This document shows, in pieces, positions 41,882 through 62,985 of a DNA stretch of 64,000 nt (its first letter is position 1; the number at the start of each line of letters is the position of its first letter). The notes beneath the pieces are model-generated. The model was not told where the DNA came from and searched no databases. It saw nothing but the letters and a program-made list of their open reading frames with translations. The stretch spans positions 172,653 through 236,652 of the IMG/VR virus record IMGVR_UViG_3300028384_001500; one strand, given 5' to 3'. A program made the translations under genes and the position numbers.

Positions 41882-43246
41882 TTATCCTAAGATTGAAGCA
41901 GCTACTGCACTTAAATGAGATCTTTCTCCTCTTTTGAGTGCAATATGAGAAGCACAACTTTGATTTTTAAACTTTTCAGAAACTATAGTCAAACCATTTG
42001 AAAGAGTGTCAATGTAAGGAGTGTCAATCTGATCAACGTCACCTAGAAGAATAATTTTAGAATTTTCTCCCATTCGTGTAATTACAGTTTTTAACTCATG
42101 TATTGTCGCATTTTGCGCTTCATCCATGATAAGTATAGTGTCATTAAACGTTCTTCCTCTAATAAAAGAAAGTGGTGCAATTTCAATAACACCTTGCGAT
42201 CTTAGTGTATTGAAAAGTGAAAGATTATTATCTTTAAGGCCTACTCTTAAATTATCCATGATGGGTGCTAACCATGGTGCCATTTTTTCTTCCATTGAAC
42301 CAGGCAAGAAACCTATATCACGACCTACAGGCTGAACATTTCTTGTAAAAACTATTCGATCATAATAACCAGCCTGTACCATCGCATATGCTGACATCAA
42401 GGTGATAAATGTTTTTCCACTACCTGCTAATCCGGAGATGGTCACTAGAGGTAATGATGGATCTAGTAATGAATTTAAAGCATAAAGCTGTTCTCTATTT
42501 TTTGCTTTAATGTCAAGTCTAGCAAATGAATCGAGAAGATCTTTGGCTTTTTTTACGCGAATGATATCTCCTTCTTCATATCTACCAATAAATGATGAAG
42601 AATCATATTTAACACAAAGATACTCATTTTCATAAGGTTGACGATTATATTTTTCCTGAAACATGTCTAAAAGCTCTTCTAGAACATCACTATCATTTTT
42701 ATATCGATCTTTGCTTTTTGTGTAATCGTAAAGTTCATCAATTAAAAAAGGATCTAACGCTTCAATTTCAGAGTAACCTTTAAAAACACCTTTATCTTCT
42801 AGTTGTATTTTATCTTTATAATAGTCTTCAGAGTGTATTCCTAGAGAATCACACTTGACTCTAAAGTTAATGTCTTTTGTTACTAATATAACTTTTTGTT
42901 TTTCTTGGTTTTGTATTTCTAAAGCCAACGATATCATTTTATTATCTGAATATTCTGGGTCTAGACCGGCTGGTACTTTATTAAAACCTGAGAGTGCTAC
43001 TTTGATTGTCTGGCCATTTTCTAATTCTATTCCTGTGTGAAGAGATCCTTTTTGTCTAAGATCATCTAGAAAACGATTAACATGTCTTGCGTTTTCTCCA
43101 ACTAAACCTTTTTTATCTTTAAACCTGTCTAACTCGTCTAAAACCACTAATGGTATTAAAAGGTCGTTTTCTGGAAAAGAGTGAATTGAATCTTTATCGT
43201 ATAGCAATACGCAAGTATCAATAATGAATATTTTTCTATCTGACAT
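41882..43246 (-). CDS. phoH: PIN-PhoH fusion (PhoH2/YlaK-like)
   Basis: PIN motif IIDTCVLL...LDELD...DINFRVK; Walker A GLAGSGKT; DIGFLPG; RGRTF; DEAQN; GDVDQID; start placed at MSDRK. Confidence 0.9.
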   Translation of the reverse strand: MSDRKIFIIDTCVLLYDKDSIHSFPENDLLIPLVVLDELDRFKDKKGLVGENARHVNRFLDDLRQKGSLHTGIELENGQTIKVALSGFNKVPAGLDPEYSDNKMISLALEIQNQEKQKVILVTKDINFRVKCDSLGIHSEDYYKDKIQLEDKGVFKGYSEIEALDPFLIDELYDYTKSKDRYKNDSDVLEELLDMFQEKYNRQPYENEYLCVKYDSSSFIGRYEEGDIIRVKKAKDLLDSFARLDIKAKNREQLYALNSLLDPSLPLVTISGLAGSGKTFITLMSAYAMVQAGYYDRIVFTRNVQPVGRDIGFLPGSMEEKMAPWLAPIMDNLRVGLKDNNLSLFNTLRSQGVIEIAPLSFIRGRTFNDTILIMDEAQNATIHELKTVITRMGENSKIILLGDVDQIDTPYIDTLSNGLTIVSEKFKNQSCASHIALKRGERSHLSAVAASILG

Positions 43247-43256
43247 AATCATCCTT

Positions 43257-43285
43257 TTGTTAATTTTAAATTGTCGATGTATAAT
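43257..43285 (+). promoter_or_regulatory. sigma70-like promoter of the stand-alone sigma-region-4 gene
   Basis: TTGTTA-17 nt-TATAAT, then AAGGA SD before the ATG at 43315. Confidence 0.45.
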
Positions 43286-43314
43286 CTTAAATATCACATA
43301 AGGAAACGTATATT

Positions 43315-43560
43315 ATGAAATGTTTTAATTATAACAAAAAGAATAATACAAATTGCGCAAACAAAGATTGCAGATACTGGATTAATTGTAACAAATCAAA
43401 TAATTGTTGTATTTTACTCCTAAAGAATAAAGAATTCAATGAAGACAAAACAACTTTACAAGATATTGGTGATATATTTAAAGTTACAAGAATGAGAATA
43501 TGTCAGATAGAGAAAAATGCAATTAAAAAGTTAAAAGACAAAATTGGTAACTTGGTATAA
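43315..43560 (+). CDS. Small Cys-rich protein with a sigma70 region 4 HTH
   Basis: TTLQDIGDIFKVTRMRICQIEKNAIKKLK matches region 4.2 (TLEEIG..F.VTRERIRQIE..AL.KL); N-terminal C-x4-C, C and CC residues. Confidence 0.8.
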   Translation: MKCFNYNKKNNTNCANKDCRYWINCNKSNNCCILLLKNKEFNEDKTTLQDIGDIFKVTRMRICQIEKNAIKKLKDKIGNLV

Positions 43561-43586
43561 AAAAAGGTCGCCATGGCGACCTTTTT
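43561..43586. terminator. Bidirectional intrinsic terminator
   Basis: Perfect 26-bp palindrome aaaaaggtcgccatggcgaccttttt between convergent genes. Confidence 0.85.
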
Positions 43587-43609
43587 AAGCTTAATAATAA
43601 AATTAATTT

Positions 43610-43801
43610 TTAAGATTTGCTAGCTTCTAAAGACGTTTTAACAACAGCTGATGCCATTTTCTTAGCTTCTCTTAGGCCTTTTCTGGCTCTAATTCCTGCT
43701 GATTTATTACCTTGAGCATTTTTAACAACGTCTGTTTGCAAAGCCTCAATTAAAACTTTAAGTTCTTCAAATTGGGAAATTAATTCTTCGTTTAGTGACA
43801 T
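43610..43801 (-). CDS. Histone H1-like Hc1/HctA-family protein
   Basis: GNKSAGIRARK...SLEASK matches the GNKAAG.RARK core of Hc1-like proteins; GGAGG SD. Confidence 0.8.
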   Translation of the reverse strand: MSLNEELISQFEELKVLIEALQTDVVKNAQGNKSAGIRARKGLREAKKMASAVVKTSLEASKS

Positions 43802-43811: not shown

Positions 43812-44072
43812 TTAATCTAAAATAATCTTTGGTTTGTCATCTTCTTTTAAATTATTATCTACTTCTTCTTCTTTGTTAATAACTTCTCTGTACTTTTTTA
43901 ATATATTATTAATATCTTTGAGTGCTTCATTGCTTTCTAGACTTAGGCATATACCATGTATTATGTCTAGTTTTTGTTGTTCAGAAACACCAAATTTAAG
44001 AACTTCAGAAACAATTTCTCTTGATTGTTGTTTTTGTCGGGCTAGTTTTTCTAACTTTACTGAATAGCTCAT
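43812..44072 (-). CDS. Hypothetical protein
   Basis: 86 aa in the operon, GAGG SD. Confidence 0.55.
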   Translation of the reverse strand: MSYSVKLEKLARQKQQSREIVSEVLKFGVSEQQKLDIIHGICLSLESNEALKDINNILKKYREVINKEEEVDNNLKEDDKPKIILD

Positions 44073-44555
44073 TTATTCCTCACTGTTTTTTATATAAAAT
44101 ATATCTTGTATAGTCTCTGATAGTATTTTTATTTTTTTACTACTTTCTAAGTTCAAAATTTTTAAATTGTGTTTATCATCGACAATATCTCTTTTTAATA
44201 CAATACTGCTAGGATACAAATCATTATCTATAACGTCCTCAACTTCTTCGTATAGATCAATAGTCGCATTATACTCGGATAAAATTTTAACTAACTTTTC
44301 AGGCAAACTAATTTCTATATCTTGTATTGATCTTACAGAACCGATCTCTTCGCTACCTACTTTAATTTCTGATTTGCATAACTCATAAACTAAATGTGTG
44401 ATTCCACAATTATTGCAATTTACATACTTAGGAATAATTTTTCCTGCATCGTCTATTTTAGAGTATACAGAGAACTTATGATATACAATTGGTTTGACAC
44501 CTTTATATAAGGGTAGTACACAGTGACATTCAATTAAGTGTTTTTGCCCGCGCAT
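44073..44555 (-). CDS. Hypothetical putative Zn-binding protein
   Basis: CHC and CNNCGITH motifs. Confidence 0.55.
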   Translation of the reverse strand: MRGQKHLIECHCVLPLYKGVKPIVYHKFSVYSKIDDAGKIIPKYVNCNNCGITHLVYELCKSEIKVGSEEIGSVRSIQDIEISLPEKLVKILSEYNATIDLYEEVEDVIDNDLYPSSIVLKRDIVDDKHNLKILNLESSKKIKILSETIQDIFYIKNSEE

Positions 44556-44557: not shown

Positions 44558-44794
44558 TTATTTAAGTGAGTTCTCTATTTGACCGGATGCTCTAGTAAAA
44601 GCTGTTGTCATGCTGGCTTCAACATAAAAACATACTTTTCTTAATTCTTCTGAATCTAGATTAATTTTTCCCTGGCCGGTTGCATCATTTAAGCTGGAAA
44701 CAACAGACTTTTTCATAAAGTCTACAACATCTGCAACGGATGCCATTACTTTGGATGCGTCAACTGTTTTTATTTTTTCTTCTTTTTTAGACAT
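44558..44794 (-). CDS. Hypothetical protein
   Basis: 78 aa in the operon, AGGAG SD. Confidence 0.55.
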   Translation of the reverse strand: MSKKEEKIKTVDASKVMASVADVVDFMKKSVVSSLNDATGQGKINLDSEELRKVCFYVEASMTTAFTRASGQIENSLK

Positions 44795-44804: not shown

Positions 44805-46037
44805 CTATAGAATTATTTTTTGGATATTATTGAAATTATTTTCAATACTTTTGACCTTCTCATCAATAATTTTAATACAGTCATCAGGAATGTAAAACTT
44901 TTGTCCGTCAATAACTATTTGTCGGTATACTTTTTTAATATTTTTCACAAACCTTAAAAAATAGTCTAGTTCTCTTGTCATTTTTTTATCAGATAAAATT
45001 CTATCTGGAAGATAAACATTTATTCTTTTTCCAGTAAACATTTTTAATCTTTTCTTTAATGGATCTACGTTTACGTCAGTTTTGATCATAGCATCGTCAA
45101 TTCTTCTTTTTAAAAAAGACCTATGAAGTTCTATTTTTTTCTTAGCAACACAAGGTTTTATTACAATCCCTTTGTTTGTAAAAGTTATCTTTTTTCCCGT
45201 TCTAAGTTTTTTTCTAACAGCTTGTGATATTGATTCTCCCATATCGCTAGAAACTACATGTCCTCCGTGAATTGCAGCGAAGTCATTTAATATGTTGAGA
45301 GTGTTTTCATCATTTACATTCAAAGAGACAGGATAAACTCTAAGTCTACCCATCTTATTGTTTTTGAGTATTGTCTCTTTTACTTCCTCATTCATTCCAA
45401 AGCAAAATATAACGTAGGGTATTTTTGTTTGATTTGCTTCAGTAAGTAAATGATGAATTTCACCAACAGACTCTATATAACCATTGATAATTACGTATTT
45501 GTAGCTCTTTGCTTCTTTTGGGATATCTCTAGTAAATGATGTATCATAATCAATATCAAATAAAAATTCGTCTAGACACTCAATTGATATATCTTCGCCT
45601 GGATAAGAATTAATATTTATGCTTCTTTCTAGACAAGCATTCTCAAATAGCCATTTTGCTAGTAGCATATTTTCTTTTCTAGAAAGAGATGATAAAAAGT
45701 CTTGTTGCATTTTCTTTTCAAATACAAACTTTTTACCTTTTTTAACTTTTGATTTAAAAAAACTGTGAATAAAAAGATCACCCATGTATGGGTAAATACT
45801 TTCACATTTATAATATTCGCTCATAATTATGTTTTTTAAAACTTCTGATCCATAGCAACTAGGCACTATATTTAGATAGTTTAAAGATGTATCTTCAATT
45901 AATTCTTTTGTGTCGTAAAGCGCTTTTCTATTTAAAGAAAGGGAGTTAAATACTTCCCTTTCTTTTTTAAGAAAACTTTGCACAAAGTCTTTTTCTAGAA
46001 TCTCTTTATGAGTCTCGCCAAAGGTTGTTGCTTGCAT
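44805..46037 (-). CDS. Degenerate GroEL/Cpn60-like protein (apical/intermediate domains retained)
   Basis: ILNDFAAIHGGHVVSSDMG aligns with GroEL MLQDIATLTGGTVISEEIG; YVIINGYIESVGEIHHLL with LLVDKKISNIRELL; LKKRLKMFTG with LQERVAKLAG; no GDGTTT. Confidence 0.7.
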   Translation of the reverse strand: MQATTFGETHKEILEKDFVQSFLKKEREVFNSLSLNRKALYDTKELIEDTSLNYLNIVPSCYGSEVLKNIIMSEYYKCESIYPYMGDLFIHSFFKSKVKKGKKFVFEKKMQQDFLSSLSRKENMLLAKWLFENACLERSININSYPGEDISIECLDEFLFDIDYDTSFTRDIPKEAKSYKYVIINGYIESVGEIHHLLTEANQTKIPYVIFCFGMNEEVKETILKNNKMGRLRVYPVSLNVNDENTLNILNDFAAIHGGHVVSSDMGESISQAVRKKLRTGKKITFTNKGIVIKPCVAKKKIELHRSFLKRRIDDAMIKTDVNVDPLKKRLKMFTGKRINVYLPDRILSDKKMTRELDYFLRFVKNIKKVYRQIVIDGQKFYIPDDCIKIIDEKVKSIENNFNNIQKIIL

Positions 46038-47946
46038 AAGTCAATATTTCCTCTGCTGATGCTTCATTATAGCCATATTCTTCAATTAAAGTTTGGATCA
46101 TATCAGTATATTTCTTTTTCTGGTCGTCATCACGCGATTTTGAACGTGTAACAATCCTTGCGATATCTTTTACTGATGAAATTAAATATTGTTCGATTGC
46201 TTCTTTTAAAGGGCCGTATGAACGATAATCAACAGTTTCACCTTTTCTCATTTTAGAAAACATAAATGCAGTTACATCATTTCTAAATCCATCTCTAGCT
46301 GAACCAACAACACCAATCATTTCTTCAATTGTTCTCATGAACTTTTCATCTGGTTCTGACTCTTCTCTTGTGATTTTATTTTTTACTTTTGTTTTAGTTG
46401 TAAAACATTCTGCGTTATCTAAGTATGAATCAAATAGTGATTGTGCTTGCTCTTCATATGCAGTAATAAATGCTTTTGCAATTTCAGTTTCTAGAATTCT
46501 GAGATATTCTTCACGAATAATCTTTTGTAGAATTTCAAGATATCTTGTCTTAGCATCTTCATCAATAATCTGTTCTTTGACTTGCTTAATTAAAGAGTCG
46601 ACAACATTAATCGGTGTAATCATACCATTATCTGAATCTGAAAGTGCTGCATCCAAGGCTTTCATAATAAAGCGTGTAGAAATACCTTCCATACCTTCGT
46701 GCTTTGCCTCATCTTTAAGATCACGAATATCGACTTTCTTTACGCGACCTTTTTCAATAATTGCCTCACCATTGTAAATTTTCATTTTAGTTAGTAAGTC
46801 ACACTTTCTAGACTGTTGTAGGCGGCTCATCACTGAAAACATTGAAGCTATTTTTAAAGTATGCGGTGCGATATGTGCATCTGTAAAGTCAGACCTACGA
46901 ATTATCTTTTCATAAATTTTTTGTTCTTGATCTAATTCTAACACATAAGGTACTTCAATCTTTAATACCCTGTCCAAAATAGCCTCGTTAGTGTGTTCAG
47001 ATTTAAATCTGTTCCACTCTGACTCATTACAATGAGATAATATCACCCCATCAAAATAAAGCATATCGTTCTTACCTGGGGTAGGCACACGTTTCTCTTG
47101 GGTTGCTGTTAACATTGTATGTAAGAATTCAATCTCATTCTTGAAAACTTCTACAAACTCAACAATACCTCGATTACCTACGTTAAATGCTCCATTAAGT
47201 GACAAAACTCTTGGATCGTCTTCTGGATATAGGTCTAATTTACTAATATCTTCTGTACCAATAAGGACTGACACGTCTTGGCTATTAGCATCCATTGGCG
47301 GAACTACAGCAATACCTCTGCGTCCTCTTTGCGAGTAACCGGTTTGCTTTACTGGAAACTTTTCATACTCACCGTTAAATTCATTCATTAATCTATGACG
47401 ACATACCGGACATAAGTCACCTTCAATATGCACACCTAGTAATTCTTCAAAGTCTTTTCTGAGACTCCTAGGTAGAAGGTGAAGTGGTTCTTCTCTTACC
47501 GGGCAGCCATCTAAGTAGTAATAATCTTCTGCTTCTTCCAGTGCACGCTTTACTGAATCGATCAACGCTGATTTTCCTGCTCCAACAGGACCCATTAAGA
47601 GAAGAACCTGCCGACTTTCTTCACCTTTAAAAGCTGCCGACTTCATAAATCTCATCAATTTGTTGATGACAGACTCCATTCCAAAAAATTCTTTTTCAAA
47701 ATAGTCATACTTTCTAATTTTGTCGCCATTAAAAATATCTCGATAACCATCAGTCCCTACATCCAAAGTATCAACACCACGATTTTTAATAGTTTCATAT
47801 AATCGCTTATGTGCTAGCTTAACTGATCCCGGTTTTTCTCTGACTAATTCAAGATAGTCTAAAAAAGTACCTTCAAACTTAACTTTATTTTTTTGTTCTC
47901 TTTGCTTTTTAATCATTGTCAAAAAGTCTTTTTGATTGCGTGCCAT
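46006..47946 (-). CDS. prkA: PrkA/YeaG AAA+ ATPase (serine kinase family)
   Basis: Walker A GPVGAGKS; CPVREEPLHLLP; GDLCPVC; GNRGIVEFVEVFK; HCNESEW; EAILDR; EGMEGISTRF. Confidence 0.92.
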   Translation of the reverse strand: MARNQKDFLTMIKKQREQKNKVKFEGTFLDYLELVREKPGSVKLAHKRLYETIKNRGVDTLDVGTDGYRDIFNGDKIRKYDYFEKEFFGMESVINKLMRFMKSAAFKGEESRQVLLLMGPVGAGKSALIDSVKRALEEAEDYYYLDGCPVREEPLHLLPRSLRKDFEELLGVHIEGDLCPVCRHRLMNEFNGEYEKFPVKQTGYSQRGRRGIAVVPPMDANSQDVSVLIGTEDISKLDLYPEDDPRVLSLNGAFNVGNRGIVEFVEVFKNEIEFLHTMLTATQEKRVPTPGKNDMLYFDGVILSHCNESEWNRFKSEHTNEAILDRVLKIEVPYVLELDQEQKIYEKIIRRSDFTDAHIAPHTLKIASMFSVMSRLQQSRKCDLLTKMKIYNGEAIIEKGRVKKVDIRDLKDEAKHEGMEGISTRFIMKALDAALSDSDNGMITPINVVDSLIKQVKEQIIDEDAKTRYLEILQKIIREEYLRILETEIAKAFITAYEEQAQSLFDSYLDNAECFTTKTKVKNKITREESEPDEKFMRTIEEMIGVVGSARDGFRNDVTAFMFSKMRKGETVDYRSYGPLKEAIEQYLISSVKDIARIVTRSKSRDDDQKKKYTDMIQTLIEEYGYNEASAEEILTYASNNLWRDS

Positions 47947-47971
47947 ATATTGTTACTCCTGCTTCTCTATA

Positions 47972-48000
47972 ATAATATTTTATTATATTTTGTATGTAAA
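47972..48000 (-). promoter_or_regulatory. sigma70-like promoter upstream of prkA
   Basis: TTTACA-17 nt-TATTAT, then AGGAG SD. Confidence 0.45.
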
Positions 48001-48001
48001 A

Positions 48002-49327
48002 TTAAATTTCCCAAACTTCCTCTTCAATTATTGTATAAAGCTTAGCGTCAAAAGGCCAGAGATCTCTGACGTGATCCATTACTTTATCAGCATAGTCTAA
48101 GTCTAGGTCTCGACCGTCATGTTCATGCTTAAGAACTAAAGTGTTTTCACTGTCAACACTATCAACATAAACATGAGGTATCATGTTAATACCTGTGTTT
48201 CTAATAAGTTCATTCCTGACCGTCTTCCAGTCATCGTGATCTGTTACTTCAGATACAATTGCGCTACCGTCTTTTTGATTCTCGTAAGCGAAGAAGTTTA
48301 ATTCTCTAAAGTCTTCTTCATCAAGAAGCATTCTTAGAGCTGAGACATCATCGCTAGTTTCTCTGACTTCAAAGCACCTTTCTAGCCCGTATTCTCTCTC
48401 TAGTTTTTGGAAAATATAAAAACCAACATGATATGGGTTAACTCTTCCTAAATGAGGCCTGACAACTGCATTATGCATCTTTAAAAAAGGAAGATGCATT
48501 TCATCAGGTAATTTTAAATCATGCAATATTTTATAATGCCAAAATGAAGCCCACCCCTCGTTAAGGATTTTTGTTTGAATCTGTGGCATAAAGTACTGAC
48601 TGTCTTCTTTGACGATATCAATTAAGTCTAATTGCCAGTCTTCAAAATAGTCTGGATAGTATTCAGAAAAGAATGCCAACATATCGTGGTCAGGTTGAAG
48701 AAGTCTTTGCTTGTTAAGGACGTCTGAATTAAGAATAATCCCTTTTTCTTTGTATTTGTTGTATTTTTTAATTTCACCTGCTTTGATTTCAGACTTAGAC
48801 TTTCTTGGTGAGTTATATCTATTTGTTTGATATTTAATTGCATGTAAGTTATCTAAAAAAGTTTCTACTTTTTCTTGACCAATCAAAGGATCTTCAACAT
48901 ATCCTTGAATTCTTTTTTTAGCATTTCTCATTCTAGAAACTACATGACTCGGGTCAGTATTCTTAAAACATCTGTTGTTTTTAAAGAAGTCACTGTGTCC
49001 AACACAATGTGCCATAATTAATATCTGTAAGTATAACGGGTTTTGCATCATCAGATATGCTATTGAAGGATTGGAATTAATAATCATTTCATAAGGCAAA
49101 CCTGTCTGACCTAAATTATAATTAAAATGTGTCTGCTCAAATGATTTACCAAATGACCAATGGTTGTAGTGGCTAGGCATTCCATGATAAGACATGTGAC
49201 CAATCATCTCGTAATAGTCACATATCTCATAAGTTATTTCGTGCCAGTCTAATCCATAACCTTTAGCTATTTCGCATATTTTATCATCCCATTCTTTGAG
49301 ATCACTTACACCCCAATCAGAGCTCAT
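48002..49327 (-). CDS. spoVR: SpoVR/YcgB family protein
   Basis: GMPSHYNHWSFGKSFE; LPYEMIINSNPSIAYL; AHCVGHSDFFKNN; TKILNEGWASFWH; NPYHVG; start placed at MSSDW with GGAGG SD. Confidence 0.92.
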   Translation of the reverse strand: MSSDWGVSDLKEWDDKICEIAKGYGLDWHEITYEICDYYEMIGHMSYHGMPSHYNHWSFGKSFEQTHFNYNLGQTGLPYEMIINSNPSIAYLMMQNPLYLQILIMAHCVGHSDFFKNNRCFKNTDPSHVVSRMRNAKKRIQGYVEDPLIGQEKVETFLDNLHAIKYQTNRYNSPRKSKSEIKAGEIKKYNKYKEKGIILNSDVLNKQRLLQPDHDMLAFFSEYYPDYFEDWQLDLIDIVKEDSQYFMPQIQTKILNEGWASFWHYKILHDLKLPDEMHLPFLKMHNAVVRPHLGRVNPYHVGFYIFQKLEREYGLERCFEVRETSDDVSALRMLLDEEDFRELNFFAYENQKDGSAIVSEVTDHDDWKTVRNELIRNTGINMIPHVYVDSVDSENTLVLKHEHDGRDLDLDYADKVMDHVRDLWPFDAKLYTIIEEEVWEI

Positions 49328-50489
49328 ATTTTCCTCCAAAAAGTTTGGCAAATTGCGGCCAGACATCTTCTTTTTCTCTAATTCTACATACTTTAAAACT
49401 ATCACTAGTTAGAACTTCAAAAACTTTTGCCATTTCTTCTCCCCAAATGCTTTCTTGTTCAGGTTTAATTTGAATATAACCGGCAAGTTGACTAATATCT
49501 GAAAGATAAGACATTTTTTCCAATGCCTTGTCATTATCTTCAGACCAGTTATCACCATCTGAGCAGTGGAACGTATAGATATTCCAAGCTGAAGGACTAT
49601 ATCTTTCATCAATAATATCTTCTGCCATTGCTAAACCGGAAGAAATATAAGTTCCTCCACTGCTGGCTTTCTTAAAGAAATCGTCTTCATTTACTTCTTG
49701 AGCTTCAGTTGTATGTGAAATAAAAACAATATCAACAGTTTGATATTTATATCTAATAAATTGATAAAGCAAAAAGAAGAAAGATCTAGCCAAAAACTTT
49801 TTACGTTTACCCATCGATCCTGAAACATCCATTATCATAAAAATCACAGCATTAGTGATAGGTTTCTTTTTCACCTCAATATGTTTATATTTTAAATCAT
49901 CATAATGAAATGGAAACCTTTCACCACTTTCTGGGTCATATGTTCCGTTTTTTATCGCTTGTTTTTGTCTTCTTATTTTGTTTTTAAGAGTTTCCTTTTT
50001 AGACAGTCTTGCACGTATACCTTTCGGTCTATATCCCTTTCTTTTAATTTTTTCAGCCATTACAGTTGATGACTGTTTTTTATCTAGATCAGGAAGATTT
50101 AAATCGTCAAAAAGATACTTTGCCAATTCATCTAATGATATCTCTACATCATAAAAGTCTTCACCTTTATTATTTCCCGGTTTACCTTCTCCGGATCGAC
50201 CTTGACCTTTTTGTTTGGCTTGTCTTACAACTTGGCCCTTCTGAATATCTTGTCCTTGAGCAGAGCCTACTCCTTTAGAACCACTTCCTTTACCATGAAT
50301 AAATTGGTATTCTTTTATACCTCTTACAGGTATTTTAATCTTTTTCTTTCCATCTTGACCAATAATAGACTCTTCAGCAACTATATCATGAATTCCTTCT
50401 TTAATTGCTTTTTCAATCTTTTCTTTATGGCGTCTTCGATCAGAAGCTGATCGATCAGCAACTGTTTTATGATTTTTAAAAATTGACAT
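49317..50489 (-). CDS. yeaH: YeaH/YhbH (DUF444) VWA-domain protein
   Basis: DRRRH; FPFHYDDLKYK; MIDAS-like MDVSGSM; FISHTTEA; SGGTYISS; WNIYTFHCSDGDNW. Confidence 0.9.
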   Translation of the reverse strand: MSIFKNHKTVADRSASDRRRHKEKIEKAIKEGIHDIVAEESIIGQDGKKKIKIPVRGIKEYQFIHGKGSGSKGVGSAQGQDIQKGQVVRQAKQKGQGRSGEGKPGNNKGEDFYDVEISLDELAKYLFDDLNLPDLDKKQSSTVMAEKIKRKGYRPKGIRARLSKKETLKNKIRRQKQAIKNGTYDPESGERFPFHYDDLKYKHIEVKKKPITNAVIFMIMDVSGSMGKRKKFLARSFFFLLYQFIRYKYQTVDIVFISHTTEAQEVNEDDFFKKASSGGTYISSGLAMAEDIIDERYSPSAWNIYTFHCSDGDNWSEDNDKALEKMSYLSDISQLAGYIQIKPEQESIWGEEMAKVFEVLTSDSFKVCRIREKEDVWPQFAKLFGGKYEL

Positions 50490-57786: not shown

Positions 57787-58110
57787 TTATATTTCAATCA
57801 CATAAGAATATTTAACACCTGGATTGAATAATTGCTTCTGATACGGTCTGGCTTTGAAATCTTTAAGTATGTTGAAGTCTTTATCTAAAAATATAATATG
57901 AAGAGGAATTCCAGTATTTTTCATTGTAAAAGAATGATTTACGGGTGTATTATAAACAAACAACATACCGTGATTTTTTGGAAGTTCTTTTATTTTTGAC
58001 AGGCCTATTCTTTTTTTATTGGGAGTGTCAGCTATGGCTAGTGTGTAAGTCCTTCCCATAATTTTTGTTTTAATTCTCTTATAACCTTTAAAAAGTTGGT
58101 AAAAATGCAA
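57787..58110 (-). CDS. DUF192-family protein
   Basis: IADTPNKKRIGLS...GMLFVY...FTMKNTGIPLHIIFLD...YVIEI; start uncertain (TTG 58110 or a downstream ATG). Confidence 0.8.
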   Translation of the reverse strand: MHFYQLFKGYKRIKTKIMGRTYTLAIADTPNKKRIGLSKIKELPKNHGMLFVYNTPVNHSFTMKNTGIPLHIIFLDKDFNILKDFKARPYQKQLFNPGVKYSYVIEI

Positions 58111-58132
58111 CGTGCACCGCCTAATGATATAG

Positions 58133-58141
58133 TATAAATAT
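58133..58141. promoter_or_regulatory. AT-rich promoter motif in a divergent intergenic region
   Basis: Reads ATATTTATA on the minus strand (family motif) and TATAAATA (T4 late consensus) on the plus strand; orientation ambiguous. Confidence 0.4.
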
Positions 58142-58157
58142 ACACCAGGAGAAGAGA

Positions 58158-58616
58158 ATGTTTATGTTTGCAATATTTTTAACAATTCAAAATGCAAATG
58201 CTGACAAAGAGACGCTAGTAAAAGCATATGAATGGGAAAAAAAACCAGCAATACAAATTTGCGGTGATTCAAATGTAACAATTAAAGAAGTAAATAATGC
58301 CCTTTCTTATTGGCAAGATGAGCTAAATAATAAAAACTTGGTAAAAAGTGTATCTTACAAAGAAACATGCTCATTTAATAGATCAAATGTTATTTTATTT
58401 ACTAACGAATACAATAGAAGATTTGAAAAAGAACTGGCAAATACAAACTTAGACTGGTATTATTATGAAGGTGAAAGCCAAAAATATCTGAACACAGCAA
58501 AAGTAGCAATCCCTAATAATATATCATATAAGCGACAATTAACAATTACACATGAGTTAGGTCACGCCTTGGGTTATCACCACTCGAATCACGAAGTAAT
58601 GAAAAGCCATTTTTAA
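58158..58616 (+). CDS. Metzincin/matrixin-like zinc metalloprotease, probably secreted
   Basis: HELGHALGYHH (HExxHxxGxxH) with a Met-turn (EVM); signal-peptide-like N-terminus; AGGAG SD. Confidence 0.8.
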   Translation: MFMFAIFLTIQNANADKETLVKAYEWEKKPAIQICGDSNVTIKEVNNALSYWQDELNNKNLVKSVSYKETCSFNRSNVILFTNEYNRRFEKELANTNLDWYYYEGESQKYLNTAKVAIPNNISYKRQLTITHELGHALGYHHSNHEVMKSHF

Positions 58617-58620
58617 ACAA

Positions 58621-58644
58621 ATAAAAACTCCGGCCTGACCGGAG
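58621..58644 (-). terminator. Intrinsic terminator (minus strand)
   Basis: Stem ctccgg/ccggag with a 5-nt loop, followed by TTTTTAT on the minus strand. Confidence 0.65.
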
Positions 58645-58710
58645 CGAGCTGCCCAACTCTATGAGCGAAGAGCAGTACCCCGAGGGGGTCCTACTTTCTC
58701 TCCACCCTGC

Positions 58711-59169
58711 TTACTCAAGAAAATCATCTGGATATCGATTTGGGTTCCGATTTCTAGAATACCGATCAAGATTATAATCATCCGAACCCAAATAAGAGTC
58801 AGTCTTACTCCGAGCTAGATCATATGCTTTATCATCTAATGCACGTAGATCATGCAAAGAGTCAGGGTGAAGTGCACGATACCCGCCCGGGAAAAAAGGA
58901 TCAACCGGCTCATAGAGTGCAGCAGCCTCATTACCTAACCTTTCCATGTCACCAACTTCCATATACGCTATGTAGTTATCGACATAATCATCTGGACCGC
59001 CCAATGCGTCGACAAGAGAGTGGGCTTGTTCTACTGACCCCCTATCGATCAACGAGTTAATCTTTGCTACGTGACTATTAGGAATATGCGCAGGTAATGT
59101 CGGCTTAATCCGATGTTCAGATAAAACTTCCATGATTAGGTCTCGTAAACGTCTTCTATTTAATTTCAT
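58711..59169 (-). CDS. Single-unit paralog of the tandem-repeat protein, with the shared leader
   Basis: MKLNRRRLRDLIMEVLSEHRIKP...LVDALGGP...VGDMERLGN; start placed by GGAG SD. Confidence 0.75.
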   Translation of the reverse strand: MKLNRRRLRDLIMEVLSEHRIKPTLPAHIPNSHVAKINSLIDRGSVEQAHSLVDALGGPDDYVDNYIAYMEVGDMERLGNEAAALYEPVDPFFPGGYRALHPDSLHDLRALDDKAYDLARSKTDSYLGSDDYNLDRYSRNRNPNRYPDDFLE

Positions 59170-59191
59170 ATTATTTTCTCCAATTGCCTGC

Positions 59192-59578
59192 TTAAATAAA
59201 GTCATCATCATCATCGTCGAAATCATCGACAATAGTCGACACCGGATAAGTGTTCATATTACCAGGATAATATTCTCTAAATCGGCCTCGTCCTCCGCCT
59301 ATCTCATCATCGAAGTATTGGATCTGTGCGCCGATTGTATCTGTGTCACCGCTCTCTAAGCTGTGCACGTGAGTAAAACCCATACCTTTGAGTGCTACAA
59401 GAGCACCGGCAACTTCATCCATTTCGTCGACGACGATTTCTCCACCTGCTAGTTCAGGATGGCGCAGGGTGAATCCGGCACCTAGTGATAACTCTACAAC
59501 CTTCATAGTATTGTCTTGTAGCATTGTTAGCTCATTAAGGATCATGCGTCGCAACGCTCTTCTGTTTAAGCTTTTCAT
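59192..59578 (-). CDS. Acidic hypothetical protein with the shared leader
   Basis: MKSLNRRALRRMILNEL; poly-Asp C-terminus; AGGAGG SD; ATGA overlap. Confidence 0.7.
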   Translation of the reverse strand: MKSLNRRALRRMILNELTMLQDNTMKVVELSLGAGFTLRHPELAGGEIVVDEMDEVAGALVALKGMGFTHVHSLESGDTDTIGAQIQYFDDEIGGGRGRFREYYPGNMNTYPVSTIVDDFDDDDDDFI

Positions 59579-61680
59579 AAAGTAGGCCCTCCTGCGGCTT
59601 CTATCATTTCTTCCAGTTCATAAGCACGAGACTGCAATTCTTCTTTATCATCGTAGTAATCGGGATACTCCATTTCATACCCATAAGCAGCCTCGATGGG
59701 ATCAACACCGAATCGCTCTTGAGTCATGAGGTAGTCCTGTCTTTCCATTTCCATTTCTTCGAGTTGTGCCTCGATACGCTGCAATTCTTGCATCATTGCG
59801 TCGATCGACATGGGAGGCTGTCCGCCTATACCCATGCTTGACATCTCTTGCAAGATCATGCGTCGTAATCCGGCTCTGTTGGAGTTATGTTCATTTAGCG
59901 GTTTAACACTTCCCATGCCTCGCATGTATCTGTCACGCATGTATGGGTAACTTGCATGTGTACGCGCACCCGGTTTTGTAGTGCCATCGAACCCAGGGGC
60001 TAGTCCGCGTGAGACTTTGTCTGCCCCTAACCTGTAAGCCTGGTTGTCTAAGTCTTCAAGTTGTCTGTAGTCATCAGATTCGTACCATTCTGGATCTGAG
60101 TAATCAGCATTGGCAAGTATATCAGCTCGAGCATTACCTAGCTTTTCTAAGTCACCCACTTCTTCGTAGGCTCGATAATTTTCGACCCAATTTGGATCGC
60201 CACCAAAAGCGTCGATGAATGTCTGTGCCTGATCAAAATCGCCGGTATTAATTAAGTCATGGATCTTATCGATGTGCGACTGCGGCAAACCTAGTAGATC
60301 AAGCGGTGGAGGCGCAATACGATGTTCATTTAGTGGGTTGCCGTCGTCATCGAAATAGGTAGGCGACTTGTCTCCTCTATGGTCAACAAAAGTATGAGGC
60401 AAAGTGTTATTTCTAATGTTGAAGTATCTGTCACGCATATAGTCACGATCCCAAGTGGTGTCAGCTGGAAGTTCCCCTCTTTCTATTTTGCTATTGACAC
60501 TGTCATAAGCATGCTTATCGATATCGTAGACAGGCTGCATATCACTCATTGTTGACCAACCTCTTTCTGTTTTAGGTACTCTGGACATAACGTCAGCTGC
60601 CCGGTTACCCAGCTTTTCTAAGTCTCCGACTTCATCATACATTTGATAATCTCTTGCATAGTTAGGAGGACCACCAAAAGCGTCGATGAGTGACTGTGCC
60701 ATTTCTAATTCTCCATCACTGATGAGATCATGGATCTTGTCGACGTGATCCTGTGGTACACCCGGTAGATTAAGTGAGGGCGCAATGCGATGCTCAGATA
60801 GCGGCCTGTCTCTGTTACCTACATATCGTCGCATATCAGACTGAAAGCTACCACTACCACCAAAAATAGAATGAGCATCTCCGTCTATCATTTGCCCTCT
60901 TTTGTGAGCTATACCAACAGCTTCCCTATCTATGTTTTTGAGTGCATTTGTCAATTCTAAACTGTCGCGATCATATGTCGATCTAGCATCGTAGGCTTGA
61001 TTGCCCAATTTCTCCATGTCACCTACATTACTATAAAGAATATAGTCGTCAACGTAGTCAACAGGCCCGCCAAGAGCATCGATGAGCGACCGTGCCATCT
61101 CTATTTCACCTCCGTCGATGAGGTCTTGTATTTTGTGCAAATGGTGAAGAGGAATATTTGTGGGAACAGGAGGCGCAGTGAGATGCTCAAATAAGAATTC
61201 ATCCGGATCCGATTCATCATCGATATATCTATCTCTGTTACCTCTATAGCGATCCAGAGCTATGTCTTGGGCATCTGGGTTATAATACTCTTGACCGTCC
61301 TCAATTTCTACGGCTTTGTCCTGTGATAGCGAGTAAGCCTCCCTGTCTACATCACGTACTTTTTTCCAGTCATCAGTTTTCATAAAGTCACGCGCAGCGA
61401 ATTCTTCTGGAGAGTCAGGGAGGATGTCTGCAGCTCGATTACCTAGCTTCTCCATATCACCTACATTTTGGTACTCTAGATAATCCTGCGCATAAGTAGG
61501 AGAGCCACCCAAAGCATCAACCAGCGATTGGGCTTGGGATAAGTCACCGTGATCGATGATGCCATGTATAGTATCCAAGTGCTGAGGTGGTATTGCACCT
61601 GCGTCTGGCATTGTCCGGTGTTCTCTTAAAGCCATTCGCTCCAAGATCATTCGTCGTATTTTCTGTCGTGAGATTTTCAT
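59575..61680 (-). CDS. Tandem-repeat polyprotein-like protein (four units of about 131-156 aa plus an acidic tail)
   Basis: Four copies of LxEH..P...I..LID.G...AQ.L.DA.GG...VGD(M/L)EKLGN; start placed at MKISRQ by GGAG SD. Confidence 0.8.
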   Translation of the reverse strand: MKISRQKIRRMILERMALREHRTMPDAGAIPPQHLDTIHGIIDHGDLSQAQSLVDALGGSPTYAQDYLEYQNVGDMEKLGNRAADILPDSPEEFAARDFMKTDDWKKVRDVDREAYSLSQDKAVEIEDGQEYYNPDAQDIALDRYRGNRDRYIDDESDPDEFLFEHLTAPPVPTNIPLHHLHKIQDLIDGGEIEMARSLIDALGGPVDYVDDYILYSNVGDMEKLGNQAYDARSTYDRDSLELTNALKNIDREAVGIAHKRGQMIDGDAHSIFGGSGSFQSDMRRYVGNRDRPLSEHRIAPSLNLPGVPQDHVDKIHDLISDGELEMAQSLIDAFGGPPNYARDYQMYDEVGDLEKLGNRAADVMSRVPKTERGWSTMSDMQPVYDIDKHAYDSVNSKIERGELPADTTWDRDYMRDRYFNIRNNTLPHTFVDHRGDKSPTYFDDDGNPLNEHRIAPPPLDLLGLPQSHIDKIHDLINTGDFDQAQTFIDAFGGDPNWVENYRAYEEVGDLEKLGNARADILANADYSDPEWYESDDYRQLEDLDNQAYRLGADKVSRGLAPGFDGTTKPGARTHASYPYMRDRYMRGMGSVKPLNEHNSNRAGLRRMILQEMSSMGIGGQPPMSIDAMMQELQRIEAQLEEMEMERQDYLMTQERFGVDPIEAAYGYEMEYPDYYDDKEELQSRAYELEEMIEAAGGPTL

Positions 61681-61703
61681 TTCTGCTCCGTGATGCATCG
61701 TAT

Positions 61704-61712
61704 TATAACTAT
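61704..61712 (-). promoter_or_regulatory. ATANTTATA putative late-promoter motif
   Basis: ATAGTTATA about 24 nt upstream of the ATG at 61680. Confidence 0.45.
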
Positions 61713-61749
61713 TTACACTGTATTTATTTTTCTTATTAAATATTAAAAA

Positions 61750-62385
61750 CTAGTCACGAGTTATAAAAAGTTTATTGCCCATTGCCATAATAGTCGTGTT
61801 ACTCTTAGAATAGCGTTTACTCAGGGGAGACATTGCCCAGTAAATACCGTCGTAGCCTATCATGTTCTTAGGAATACGCTGAGACATGTTATCCCAGTCG
61901 TCAGGAGTCAAGGTGTTCTTTGTGTCATCACACTGAAAAACATCGATGTCTCCGGCGCCTGACTGGCTATACTGGGATCGATTTCTAAGATAGAAGTCCC
62001 AGACGTCTTGAGCATCTTTGCTGACCATGCGACGATCAGCGACCAGCCCTGACCCCTTCATCGAGGCGACTTCCATCGCGATATCATAGATAAGCGGGCC
62101 GTAACCGTTTGCCGCCATGGCCTGATACACCTCCCAAGCGCCGCCGCACGTGTCGTCTTTTAAGGGCACTATCGCAATATATCCGTATATGCCCTCAGGA
62201 GACGGACTGTGGTCTTCAGCGTAGAATCTACCCATAGACCCGTCGGCGTTGATTCCGCAATATGTCACACAAACGTCGCCCTTAGGGAAGAAATTGACAT
62301 TTACACCGATTGTCGGAGGTAACTCTCCGTGTGCGATCATGGCTTCAGAGATTATTTGATTTAGCTGCCTTCTTGTAATTCTCAT
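61750..62385 (-). CDS. GNAT-like protein with the shared leader
   Basis: WEV...NGYGPLIYDIAME...VSKDAQDVWDFY resembles GNAT motif A/B spacing. Confidence 0.5.
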   Translation of the reverse strand: MRITRRQLNQIISEAMIAHGELPPTIGVNVNFFPKGDVCVTYCGINADGSMGRFYAEDHSPSPEGIYGYIAIVPLKDDTCGGAWEVYQAMAANGYGPLIYDIAMEVASMKGSGLVADRRMVSKDAQDVWDFYLRNRSQYSQSGAGDIDVFQCDDTKNTLTPDDWDNMSQRIPKNMIGYDGIYWAMSPLSKRYSKSNTTIMAMGNKLFITRD

Positions 62386-62391
62386 AGTGAT

Positions 62392-62400
62392 TATAACTAT
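62392..62400 (-). promoter_or_regulatory. ATANTTATA putative late-promoter motif
   Basis: ATAGTTATA only 6 nt upstream of the ATG at 62385; no SD visible. Confidence 0.45.
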
Positions 62401-62402
62401 CT

Positions 62403-62430
62403 AAAAGTTCTCCAAAATTCAGGAGAAATT
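62403..62430. repeat. Degenerate third copy of the intergenic palindromic repeat
   Basis: aaaagttctccaaaattcaggagaaatt versus aaaagttttccaaattttccggagaaatt. Confidence 0.6.
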
Positions 62431-62710
62431 AACGTCGTCTTACCCATATGTTATCATCACAGCGACTAGTTCGCAAATGCCAACAACCGCAGTCATCCGA
62501 CCAGTACGCTGTATGCTGACGATCGTACTTCAAGAACTGATATCTTGAGTAAAGATCAGCAACTTCCTCGTAAGGAAAACGAATTTTCTTGCACCCGCTG
62601 TAGAAACAGTTACACTTACTGAACTCACCGCGGAAATGATATTTTCCGTTTTTAATAATTATTGACCAAGTTCTCCGCCCATCCCTGACAGACTTACATA
62701 CACGTTCCAT
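62429..62710 (-). CDS. Small Cys/Trp-rich hypothetical protein
   Basis: GAGGAG SD before MERVCK; several Cys residues. Confidence 0.55.
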   Translation of the reverse strand: MERVCKSVRDGRRTWSIIIKNGKYHFRGEFSKCNCFYSGCKKIRFPYEEVADLYSRYQFLKYDRQHTAYWSDDCGCWHLRTSRCDDNIWVRRR

Positions 62711-62920
62711 TGAACACACTCCTCTATGATAATCGTTTTTTTACGATATCACTTACGATGTGTCCCGAAACTTCACGTCCACCCATTAGCCTCTCTTCCA
62801 GAAGGACCTGCGCTTTCCCGTTCGGATCTAAGCTTTACCTCTATGTTGCTGTCTAGACACCGTCGATCTTTTAGGTTGGCCATTCTGGACTATGGCAATC
62901 TCTAGTACCCATACATTTAT

Positions 62921-62949
62921 ATTATATGCTGTTTCACACACGGTTACAA
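62921..62949 (-). promoter_or_regulatory. Near-consensus sigma70 promoter
   Basis: TTGTAA-17 nt-TATAAT directly downstream of a terminator and the palindromic repeat. Confidence 0.55.
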
Positions 62950-62959
62950 AAGTTTTGCA

Positions 62960-62984: not shown

Positions 62985-62985
62985 G

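What the first reader, a model, noticed from the sequence alone, without database searches (positions are those of the whole stretch)
44805..46037. Degenerate, apparently ATPase-dead GroEL overlapping prkA
Seen: colinear similarity to GroEL across the intermediate and apical (substrate/GroES-binding) region, but the equatorial GDGTTT nucleotide motif is absent (the position reads roughly YPYMGD), the protein is only 410 aa, and it overlaps the prkA stop by 32 nt. Established: phage chaperonins described so far are full ATPases, and isolated GroEL apical domains can act as mini-chaperones. Inference: a holdase, a co-assembling modulator or inhibitor of host GroEL, or a substrate adaptor powered by the adjacent PrkA AAA+ motor.
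Basis: partly seen in the sequence, partly recalled or inferred. Interest (0 to 1): 0.7.

Follow-up and report, generated by a model that had tools for sequence, protein, structure and literature searches.

The report
Miniature ATP-site-less GroEL of jumbo phages
This gene encodes a shrunken relative of the protein-folding machine GroEL that keeps the substrate-binding domain but has lost the ATP-binding parts. It is a conserved, unannotated core gene of a lineage of large uncultured marine phages that also carry a normal GroEL.

Summary
Window 44805-46037 (-) is an intact 410-aa ORF that overlaps the prkA stop by 32 nt. It is a real GroEL homologue. A family profile matches GroEL residues 148-376 at E 2.5e-13. 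AlphaFold models of two members only about 28% identical both superpose on whole GroEL subunits (Z 17.9 and Z 25.3; rmsd 3.1 Å over 367 of 370 residues). The equatorial domain is cut down by roughly 130-160 residues. GDGTT is absent in 0 of 261 members.

It is not a pseudogene. The family has 1,874 clusters at 50% identity, members are 370-470 aa, and dN/dS is about 0.07. It has no Pfam family and no match in 50,697 phage records.

It is a core gene, always followed by the same block (160-aa ORF, 86-aa ORF, Hc1, sigma-r4, PIN-PhoH). The prkA operon lies upstream only in some clades. One 99%-complete genome has the gene but no prkA. Every large genome checked also has one canonical GroEL and no GroES.

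Best reading: a nucleotide-independent binding module built on the GroEL apical groove (invariant E-x-H-H, N226). It probably acts as a dedicated holdase or adaptor. The link to PrkA is secondary. The mechanism is inferred, not shown.

The parts
44805..46037 (-). Mini-GroEL gene, 410 aa, stop codon included
   Evidence: ORF. 127 homologues at 36-87% identity, almost all 401-430 aa. AlphaFold model with pLDDT 87.4. GroEL fold.
45690..46037 (-). Residues 1-116: reduced N-terminal half of the equatorial domain. In GroEL terms it has strand 1, helix A, the stem-loop hairpin, helices B and C, a short helix D and helix F.
   Evidence: Secondary structure of the model. The whole chain superposes on GroEL 2-522. 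No sequence signal to GroEL. Naming of the helices is inferred from their order.
45777..45794 (-). Y82-P83-Y84-M85-G86-D87: the conserved loop at the place of GroEL's phosphate-binding GDGTTT
   Evidence: P83 and G86 are invariant in the 36-sequence alignment. E79 is kept in 56/57, P83 in 46/57 and G86 in 45/57 of the wider family. 0 of 261 members have GDGTT.
45009..45689 (-). Residues 117-343: intermediate plus apical domain, the part homologous to GroEL 148-381 by sequence
   Evidence: The apical domain alone gives Z 18 at rmsd about 3 Å.
45450..45461 (-). E193-I-H195-H196 on the helix that corresponds to GroEL helix H (E232, L234, P235). This is the most conserved motif of the family.
   Evidence: E193 57/57, H195 55/57, H196 57/57. 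E[IVLM]HH occurs in 219 of 261 members, fragments included. Mapping from hhalign.
44808..45008 (-). Residues 344-410: rest of the intermediate domain (helix M) and a minimal C-terminal equatorial part (hairpin, last helix, last strand). GroEL residues from about 410 to 496 have no counterpart.
   Evidence: Secondary structure and superposition ranges. Placement of the deletions is inferred.
46006..46037 (-). 32-nt overlap of the prkA 3' end and the mini-GroEL 5' end, in different frames
   Evidence: The same overlap is present in every locus of the window's clade.
46006..47946 (-). prkA / yeaG (AAA_PrkA plus PrkA C-terminal domain), 646 aa
   Evidence: Pfam E 7.8e-142 and 1.7e-77.
48002..49405 (-). 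spoVR / ycgB homologue
   Evidence: Pfam SpoVR E 1.5e-111. The listed GTG start probably lies too far upstream.
49317..50489 (-). yeaH (DUF444) homologue, first gene of the prkA operon
   Evidence: Pfam DUF444 E 6.3e-117.
44558..44794 (-). 78-aa ORF downstream, poorly conserved, present in part of the loci
   Evidence: No family.
44073..44555 (-). 160-aa ORF with a CxC...CxxC pattern, found downstream of the mini-GroEL in all related loci
   Evidence: No Pfam, PHROG or Atlas lead.
43812..44072 (-). 86-aa ORF, conserved downstream neighbour
   Evidence: No family.
43610..43801 (-). Histone H1-like Hc1 gene, part of the conserved block
   Evidence: Pfam Hc1 E 2.1e-13..
43315..43560 (+). Small sigma-70 region-4 protein, part of the conserved block
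   Evidence: Pfam E 1.1e-9..
41882..43297 (-). PIN-PhoH gene, end of the conserved block
   Evidence: Pfam PhoH E 3.8e-50, PIN_4 E 1.4e-28..

Best explanation
The gene encodes a miniaturised derivative of a group I chaperonin (GroEL).

Shown or strongly supported:
- It keeps a complete apical domain, the intermediate domain and a stripped-down equatorial domain.
- It has lost every glycine-rich nucleotide-binding motif.

Inferred from the models:
- It has also lost the segments that carry GroEL's ring-to-ring contacts.
- It therefore most likely does not hydrolyse ATP and does not run a GroEL folding cycle.

Inferred mechanism:
- What selection preserves is the groove between the two apical helices that bind substrate and the GroES loop in GroEL. 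Part of that groove is kept as in GroEL (E232, L237, T261, N265, R268 equivalents). Part is replaced by an invariant His-His pair.
- I therefore read the protein as a nucleotide-independent binding module. It would hold or present a specific peptide segment of a partner protein, acting as a dedicated holdase or assembly adaptor.
- It would work within the large proteostasis kit of these jumbo phages: canonical GroEL, Hsp20, ClpP and, in many, the PrkA-YeaH-SpoVR module.
- In the window's clade it is co-transcribed and probably translationally coupled with prkA. That link is a later, lineage-specific arrangement.
For: Homology and fold:
- PDB sequence and profile matches and hhalign.
- Foldseek E 8e-18, with the listed hits all GroEL/Hsp60.
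- VIA-align aligns model residues 10-410 to GroEL 3-524 with 388 residues aligned.
- An independent model of a 370-aa member, 28% identical in its best tblastn segment, gives Z 25.3 and rmsd 3.1 Å over 367 residues against T. thermophilus Cpn60 residues 9-523.

Loss of the ATP site:
- 0 of 261 members have GDGTT, against 118 of 120 full-length GroELs of the same phage lineage.
- The lineage's full GroELs keep T30, G32, P33, D52, D87-T91, D398, G414-416 and D495.
- The mini form has about 130-160 fewer residues, all in the equatorial part.

Selection:
- 1,874 clusters at E<=1e-3 and 271 at E<=1e-30.
- Constant length.
- dN/dS 0.07 at dS 0.44.

Conserved groove:
- E193 57/57, H195 55/57, H196 57/57, L198 52/57, N226 57/57, T222 41/57, R at 229 40/57.

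Core-gene status and independence from PrkA.

Co-occurrence with one canonical GroEL in 5 of 5 large records, and no Cpn10 in any.
Against: - No experiment and no interaction prediction supports any partner. The homodimer prediction gave no answer.
- The groove residues most important for GroEL's promiscuous hydrophobic binding are changed (L234 to His, L259 mostly Lys). A general holdase activity is therefore doubtful, and the protein may bind something other than a polypeptide.
- A conserved E79 / P83 / G86 loop and D358 sit about where the nucleotide pocket was. A remodelled ligand site cannot be excluded.
- Residue-level statements about the equatorial part rest on AlphaFold models and on the order of helices, not on an alignment.
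- The strictly conserved 32-nt overlap with prkA in the window's clade could mean a real functional tie there.
Confidence: 0.5

Rival explanations
1. In the window's clade the protein is a substrate receptor or regulator of the phage PrkA machine. It would capture proteins through the apical groove and hand them to the Lon-like AAA+ protease PrkA. Alternatively it would shield phage proteins from PrkA. The purpose would be to recycle the host proteome for phage production.
For: - The 32-nt overlap with prkA is conserved in all loci of a clade with 100/100 support (28 distinct sequences) whose mini-GroELs are only 30-53% identical to the window's.
- No terminator-like site lies between the genes.
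- E. coli YeaG drives broad starvation-induced proteolysis (PMC13684143).
Against: - The gene exists without PrkA in a 99%-complete genome (G003), and far from PrkA in G001.
- 20 loci have no prkA upstream.
- Other prkA-linked clades show no overlap, or an extra 79-aa gene in between.
- PrkA is 81-97% identical among phages whose mini-GroELs are only 33-52% identical. This does not look like tight co-evolution.
- Phages and bacteria with PrkA outside this lineage have no such gene.
Confidence: 0.17
2. It works on a chaperonin system. It could join or cap the phage's own full-length GroEL, which has no phage GroES. It could instead act as a decoy that binds host GroES or poisons host GroEL rings.
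For: - One canonical GroEL is present in all five large genomes that carry the mini form, and no Cpn10 in any.
- Several GroEL groove positions that I recall as GroES-loop contacts are kept: L237, T261, N265, R268 equivalents.
- In the window's subfamily the terminal strands and the stem-loop hairpin are predicted to be present. In GroEL these build the contacts within a ring.
Against: - The equatorial part has no detectable sequence similarity to any GroEL, so a shared ring interface is unlikely.
- The family profile scores the phage's own GroEL at only 5.3 bits.
- The 370-aa subfamily lacks both terminal strands.
- L234, the central groove residue, is His.
- Co-occurrence may only reflect shared ancestry of the genomes.
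Confidence: 0.15
3. It is still a true, ring-forming, nucleotide-driven chaperonin with an unconventional ATP site.
For: - Three-domain fold.
- A conserved loop at the old phosphate-loop position and a conserved Asp (D358, 47/57) about where catalytic D398 lies (the mapping is inferred).
Against: - No Walker-like or GDGTT-like motif. Two chance-level G....GK[ST] hits occur among 261 sequences.
- The region holding G414-G416, N479, A480 and D495 has no counterpart.
- The inter-ring contact segments are missing.
Confidence: 0.05
4. It is a decaying remnant of a groEL gene with no function.
For: It is shorter than GroEL and has lost the catalytic motifs.
Against: - Hundreds of intact homologues of constant length.
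- dN/dS about 0.07.
- Conserved position in the genome.
- Confident models.
Confidence: 0.01

Closest known systems
GroEL / Cpn60 (group I chaperonin, Pfam PF00118), including phage chaperonins such as EL gp146 and the AR9 single-ring chaperonin
   Same: - Same three-domain fold.
- The apical and intermediate domains are homologous by sequence (E 2.5e-13).
- Several groove residues are kept (E232, L237, T261, N265, R268).
   Different: - About 130-160 residues shorter, all in the equatorial domain.
- No GDGTTT, no GGG loop and no counterpart of GroEL residues from about 410 to 496.
- Below the Pfam threshold.
- L234 and P235 are replaced by invariant His-His.
- Neutral to basic pI (5.9-9.4) against 4.8-5.5 for GroELs.
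- Ring formation is unknown.
Engineered GroEL 'mini-chaperones' (isolated apical domain, residues 191-376; e.g. PDB 1kid, 1fy9, 3vz6)
   Same: - The best structural matches to the apical part (Z about 18-23, rmsd 2-3 Å).
- Binding without ATP is the proposed mode of action.
   Different: - This is a natural protein, not a laboratory fragment.
- It also keeps the intermediate domain and a reduced equatorial domain.
- The hydrophobic groove is partly made polar.
Degenerate chaperonin paralogues and domains of eukaryotes (BBS6/10/12 of the BBSome assembly pathway; the chaperonin-like domain of Fab1/PIKfyve). Cited from my own knowledge, not tested here.
   Same: The chaperonin fold is reused as a protein-binding or assembly factor alongside a canonical chaperonin.
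   Different: - Those derive from group II chaperonins (CCT) of eukaryotes.
- This one derives from group I and is viral.
- No relation beyond the common superfamily.
PrkA/YeaG-YeaH-YcgB(SpoVR) operon of bacteria and some phages (Thermus phage phiYS40, Ralstonia phage RsoM2USA)
   Same: The upstream three genes are clear members (Pfam E 1e-111 to 1e-142). They are also found in other large phages (PMC8504454).
   Different: I found no described operon, cellular or viral, with a GroEL-like fourth gene. The fourth gene here belongs to another conserved block and joined the operon only in some clades.

Membership tests
GroEL / Cpn60 (PF00118) | Three-domain subunit fold (equatorial, intermediate, apical) | tested here: met
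   Two AlphaFold models (pLDDT 87.4 and 89.6) were tested. VIA-align gives Z 17.9 over model residues 10-410, and Z 25.3 with rmsd 3.1 Å over 367 of 370 residues, both against Cpn60. The equatorial domain is strongly reduced.
GroEL / Cpn60 (PF00118) | Score above the curated Pfam threshold | tested here: not met
   No PF00118 match at E<=1. The whole-genome search with PF00118 found only the 536-aa gene. Ten wider family members also gave no match.
GroEL / Cpn60 (PF00118) | Nucleotide-binding and hydrolysis residues (T30-P33 loop, D52, D87-T91 'GDGTTT', D398, G414-G416, D495) | tested here: not met
   0 of 261 members have GDGTT. The loop reads YPYMGD. The region around 410-496 has no counterpart in the models. 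The phage's own full GroEL keeps all of these residues. A possible D398 equivalent (D358) is only inferred.
GroEL / Cpn60 (PF00118) | Hydrophobic substrate and GroES-binding groove (Y199, Y203, F204, L234, L237, L259, V263, V264) | tested here: inconclusive
   Kept: L237. Aromatic in part of the members: Y199 and Y203 equivalents. Changed: L234 to His (55/57), L259 to Lys in 31/57, V263 and V264 variable (mapping).
GroEL / Cpn60 (PF00118) | Heptameric rings, stacked back to back | tested here: inconclusive
   The prediction of two copies gave 'no answer', which counts neither way. The segments that carry the inter-ring contacts (second half of helix D; helices O-Q) appear deleted. This is inferred from the models.
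GroEL / Cpn60 (PF00118) | Works with a Cpn10 (GroES) co-chaperonin | not testable with these tools
   No Cpn10 gene in the window's genome or in three complete related genomes. Host GroES cannot be examined.
Isolated-apical-domain mini-chaperone | Consists of the apical domain alone and suppresses aggregation without ATP | tested here: not met
   The protein has all three domains. The activity itself is not testable here.
PrkA-YeaH-SpoVR module (as an obligate fourth component) | Constant co-occurrence and adjacency with prkA | tested here: not met
   prkA lies upstream in 37 of 57 distinct family sequences (loci plus the window). It is absent from the 99%-complete genome G003 and distant in G001. 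No mini-GroEL occurs in the 17 phage records that hold PrkA.

The most novel reading that the evidence does not exclude
A chaperonin has been turned into a nucleotide-free receptor that works with other machines. In the window's clade it would feed or gate the phage-borne PrkA (SpdA-like) proteolysis system, so that the phage converts host protein into building blocks. More widely, it would replace the missing GroES-type partner of the phage's own GroEL. Either way it would be the first natural group I chaperonin derivative that acts without its own ATPase.
Probability: 0.15. Interest if true: 0.85.

Novelty: new variant of a known kind. Interest (0 to 1): 0.66.

Why it matters
Group I chaperonins are textbook ATP-driven machines. 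I found no description of a natural, conserved GroEL relative that has discarded the ATP site and most of the equatorial domain but kept the apical domain under strong selection.

The family is large (1,874 sequence clusters). It is restricted, as far as recorded, to uncultured viruses, and it has no Pfam family.

- It offers a natural experiment on what the GroEL apical domain can do on its own.
- It marks a jumbo-phage lineage with an unusually rich proteostasis kit: GroEL, mini-GroEL, Hsp20, ClpP and PrkA-YeaH-SpoVR.
- In the window's clade it sits in one transcription unit with PrkA. The E. coli counterpart of PrkA was recently shown to drive global starvation proteolysis. A direct test of how phages use that system becomes possible.

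Tried and rejected
- **tblastn against phage records.** The 410-aa protein found nothing in 50,697 records. A distant member found only canonical GroELs of Flavobacterium and Cellulophaga phages. No cultured phage carries the family.
- **BLASTP against the phage's own GroEL.** Nothing significant. The family profile gives it 5.3 bits, against 41.7 for E. coli GroEL. I rejected recent duplication of the resident groEL.
- **hhalign of the N-terminal 120 and C-terminal 81 residues against the matching GroEL parts.** No signal.
- **Complex prediction of two copies.** 'No answer'; not used as evidence.
- **Promoter and terminator scan.** Promoter-like sites are not enriched, and none separates prkA from the gene.
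- **T4 late promoter.** TATAAATA was not found upstream of the gene in 19 prkA-less loci.
- **Public sequencing runs.** At most 11% of the sampled words were held, so I did not attempt an expression read-out.
- **Downstream small ORFs.** Pfam, PHROGs and the ESM Atlas gave no lead.
- **Nucleic-acid binding suggested by basic pI.** Rejected as a family trait because pI ranges from 5.9 to 9.4.
- **The flanking small genes as dedicated partners.** Not pursued, because several loci have 1-3 kb insertions between them and the gene.
Full report
**What is there.** Window 44805..46037 (- strand) is an uninterrupted ORF of 410 codons with an ATG start. The gene upstream on the same strand, 46006..47946, is a full PrkA/YeaG: AAA_PrkA E 7.8e-142 and PrkA C-terminal domain E 1.7e-77. 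Before it lie spoVR/ycgB (48002..49405) and DUF444/yeaH (49317..50489).

The two reading frames share 32 nt (46006-46037). The ATG of the 410-aa ORF lies inside the Tyr-Ala codons of the PrkA tail ...LTYASNNLWRDS*. The start is credible because in 36 homologues the frame stays open from this ATG through a stretch that carries one- and two-codon indels (alignment columns 12-14). No terminator-like site separates the genes, and promoter-like sites are not enriched.

The window is the last 64 kb of a 236,652-bp IMG/VR virus record estimated to be 77% complete. It has a T4-type major capsid gene (Gp23, E 6.7e-66). The nearest cultured capsid relatives are Flavobacterium phage immuto (47% identity) and Microcystis phage Mel-JY01.

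**Is it GroEL-like?** Yes.
- The single sequence matches GroEL apical domains in the PDB at E 5e-9. It matches full GroELs colinearly over residues 140-336 = GroEL 175-374.
- PHROGs gives only 'chaperonin groEL' (E 4.5e-16). Pfam PF00118 does not see it.
- A profile of 36 homologues matches GroEL residues 148-374 at E 2.5e-13.
- Profile-profile comparison with a GroEL alignment anchored on E. coli GroEL aligns 119-343 with 149-381 (E 6.6e-6, probability 85%).
- An AlphaFold model built on the alignment is confident (mean pLDDT 87.4). Foldseek against the PDB returns 482 hits at E<=0.001. The 50 listed are all GroEL/Hsp60, best E 8e-18, with TM-scores up to 0.67 for GroES-bound subunits.
- VIA-align aligns model residues 10-410 to GroEL 3-524, with about 388 residues aligned at rmsd 4.5-5.7 Å against GroES-bound conformers. 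The apical domain alone gives Z 18 at about 3 Å.
- As a control I modelled a 370-aa member from a complete 298-kb genome, 28% identical in its best tblastn segment, with its own alignment of 38 sequences (pLDDT 89.6). It gives Z 25.3 and rmsd 3.1 Å over 367 of 370 residues against T. thermophilus Cpn60 residues 9-523.

The whole protein is therefore a GroEL subunit in miniature, not only the middle part. Both models take the raised, 'open' apical position of GroES-bound subunits. I treat that as a property of the prediction, not as a finding.

**What has been lost.** The secondary structure of the two models follows the order of GroEL elements:
- terminal strand (window subfamily only), helix A, stem-loop hairpin, helices B and C, a loop, a short helix D, then helices F and G;
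- the apical domain;
- helices K, L and M, and the last helix (plus a hairpin and a last strand in the window subfamily).

By this reading, GroEL residues of about 98-135 (second half of helix D, helix E) and about 410-496 have no counterpart. The second stretch holds the G414-G416 loop, helices N to Q, N479, A480 and D495. This placement is inferred from element order and lengths. The N- and C-terminal parts have no sequence signal to GroEL, and I had no model coordinates.

From established knowledge of GroEL, the missing stretches carry the ring-to-ring contacts (K105, A109, E434, R452, E461, S463, V464) and half of the nucleotide pocket.

It is conserved (P83 and G86 invariant in the close family) but chemically unlike GDGTTT. 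None of 261 family sequences has GDGTT. By contrast, 118 of 120 full-length GroELs of the same phage lineage have it, and those keep T30, G32, P33, D52, D87-T91, D398, G414-416 and D495.

**It is a family under selection.**
- The word-indexed search found 127 homologues at 36-87% identity, almost all of 401-430 aa.
- The exhaustive profile search found 1,874 clusters (50% identity) at E<=1e-3, 920 at E<=1e-10 and 271 at E<=1e-30, with lengths of 370-490 aa.
- Ten diverse members have no Pfam family and at best a weak PHROG GroEL match.
- In the ESM Atlas the nearest clusters are 'hypothetical protein', 94-100% viral.
- For the closest unsaturated pair of loci, dN/dS is 0.07 at dS 0.44.

The pseudogene reading is excluded.

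**Context.** I fetched 56 related IMG/VR loci plus contigs for several database hits. I mapped the window's neighbouring proteins on them.
- In every locus that reaches far enough, the gene is followed by the same block: the 160-aa ORF, Hc1, an antisense sigma-70 region-4 gene and PIN-PhoH. The 86-aa ORF is detected in most loci. Some loci have insertions such as ClpP plus a helicase.
- The yeaH-spoVR-prkA operon lies directly upstream for 37 of 57 distinct family sequences (loci plus the window) and is absent there for 20.
- In a maximum-likelihood tree of the protein, the prkA-less loci fall almost into one clade, needing 1-2 changes.
- In the window's clade (28 rows, support 100/100) the 32-nt overlap is found in nearly every locus, although the proteins are only 30-53% identical to the window's and PrkA is 78-97% identical.
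- In other prkA-linked clades the genes merely abut, or a 79-aa gene lies between them.
- The 99%-complete genome G003 (340 kb) has the gene but no PrkA.
- In the complete genome G001 (298 kb, terminal repeats) the prkA operon lies about 135 kb from the gene and is followed by a convergent glycosyltransferase.

The gene is therefore a core gene of the lineage. The prkA operon is a mobile neighbour that became fused to it in one branch.

**A second groEL.** The window's genome holds one canonical GroEL (536 aa, GDGTTT intact) at C1:53477-54985, next to an Hsp20 gene.
- The three complete or near-complete related genomes and one partial genome each have one as well.
- Five fragments estimated at 40-61% complete had none, which is uninformative.
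- No Cpn10 was found in any of the five. All five encode ClpP.
- The mini form is not a recent copy of the resident GroEL. BLASTP finds nothing. The family profile scores the resident GroEL at 5.3 bits (lineage median 7), but E. coli GroEL at 41.7 and the Flavobacterium-phage GroEL at 49.1.
- The best solved-structure matches are chaperonins of the Fibrobacteres-Chlorobi-Bacteroidetes group.

**What is conserved, and the likely mechanism.** Over 57 diverse sequences the invariant or nearly invariant positions lie in the apical domain. The hhalign register maps them to GroEL as follows:

| Mini-GroEL position | Conservation | GroEL position |
|---|---|---|
| E193 | 57/57 | E232 |
| H195 | 55/57 | L234 |
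| H196 | 57/57 | P235 |
| L198 | 52/57 | L237 |
| T222 | 41/57 | T261 |
| N226 | 57/57 | N265 |
| R at 229 | 40/57 | R268 |

- L259 is mostly Lys, and V263/V264 vary.
- These positions line the groove between helices H and I. In GroEL that groove binds substrate segments and the GroES mobile loop (established knowledge).
- The groove is thus the feature under selection, but it has been made more polar and specific.
- Together with the loss of the nucleotide machinery, this points to a nucleotide-independent binding module, a dedicated holdase or adaptor for a particular partner.

Which partner is unknown. Candidates are a phage structural protein, the phage or host chaperonin system and, in the window's clade, PrkA or its substrates. 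The last idea gains some appeal from two reports. B. subtilis PrkA is a Lon-like ATP-dependent protease (PMC9512850). E. coli YeaG (renamed SpdA) drives broad starvation-induced proteolysis that supplies amino acids and energy (PMC13684143). The distribution data above show, however, that the protein's basic function cannot depend on PrkA.

**Limits.**
- The only complex prediction allowed (two copies) returned 'no answer' and is not evidence either way. The pair with PrkA exceeded the size limit.
- No expression data could be obtained. Public runs hold at most 11% of the sampled words.
- No cultured phage carries the family.
- The survey of viral chaperonins in marine viromes considered full-length GroELs and does not mention truncated forms (PMC5649160). 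Full-text searches found no description of such a protein.

**Verdict.**
- It is a new, strongly reduced variant of a known kind of protein. It forms a large unannotated viral family.

Noticed in passing
Own genome G000:C1:53477-54985 (= L001:1468-3078, - strand), outside the window: A canonical 536-aa GroEL with GDGTTT. An Hsp20 gene lies about 450 bp downstream (L001:602-1015). Its relatives form a distinct viral GroEL clade only about 37% identical to E. coli GroEL.
   Followed up: partly
L001:3080-3328 (- strand), own genome: An 82-aa ORF ends 2 nt before the start of the full-length groEL, in the position where groES normally sits. It has no Cpn10 signature and no Pfam match at E<=1. It could be a very divergent co-chaperonin or unrelated.
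   Followed up: partly
Window 46006-50489 (- strand): A complete yeaH-spoVR-prkA operon in a phage. The same three genes occur in many related marine phage contigs and, by tblastn of PrkA, in Thermus phages, Ralstonia phage RsoM2USA and huge uncultured phages. Since YeaG was reported to drive starvation proteolysis in E. coli (PMC13684143), it is a candidate host-reprogramming module.
   Followed up: partly
Window 41882-43801: A conserved block of a histone H1-like Hc1 gene, an antisense 81-aa sigma-70 region-4 protein and a PIN-PhoH fusion. It is present in all related loci.
   Followed up: no
L008:1477-3426 (own genome, C1 about 147.5-149.4 kb): The Gp23-type major capsid protein is 649 aa. 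It matches T4-like capsid proteins in two pieces covering only about 57% of its length, which suggests a large inserted domain.
   Followed up: no
Window 58000-64000: GC content rises from about 0.30-0.35 to 0.41-0.44 near the contig end. The ORFs there (up to 707 aa, mostly - strand) have no Pfam match at E<=0.001.
   Followed up: partly
L013:10134-12418 and the equivalent gap in other prkA-less loci: In the clade without prkA upstream, a ClpP protease gene and an SF2 helicase gene are inserted between the 86-aa ORF and Hc1, three genes after the mini-GroEL. All five large genomes checked encode ClpP somewhere.
   Followed up: partly
Protein P0012 (574 aa, on a 2,039-bp contig): One homologue is about 160 aa longer than all the others at 52% identity over the full query. 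It may be a fusion with the prkA 3' end caused by a frameshift or an assembly error in the overlap.
   Followed up: no
G001:C1:145744-155999 (L072): In this complete 298-kb genome the full-length GroEL, UvdE, an AAA ATPase and the yeaH-spoVR-prkA operon lie within about 12 kb of each other. The mini-GroEL is about 135 kb away.
   Followed up: partly
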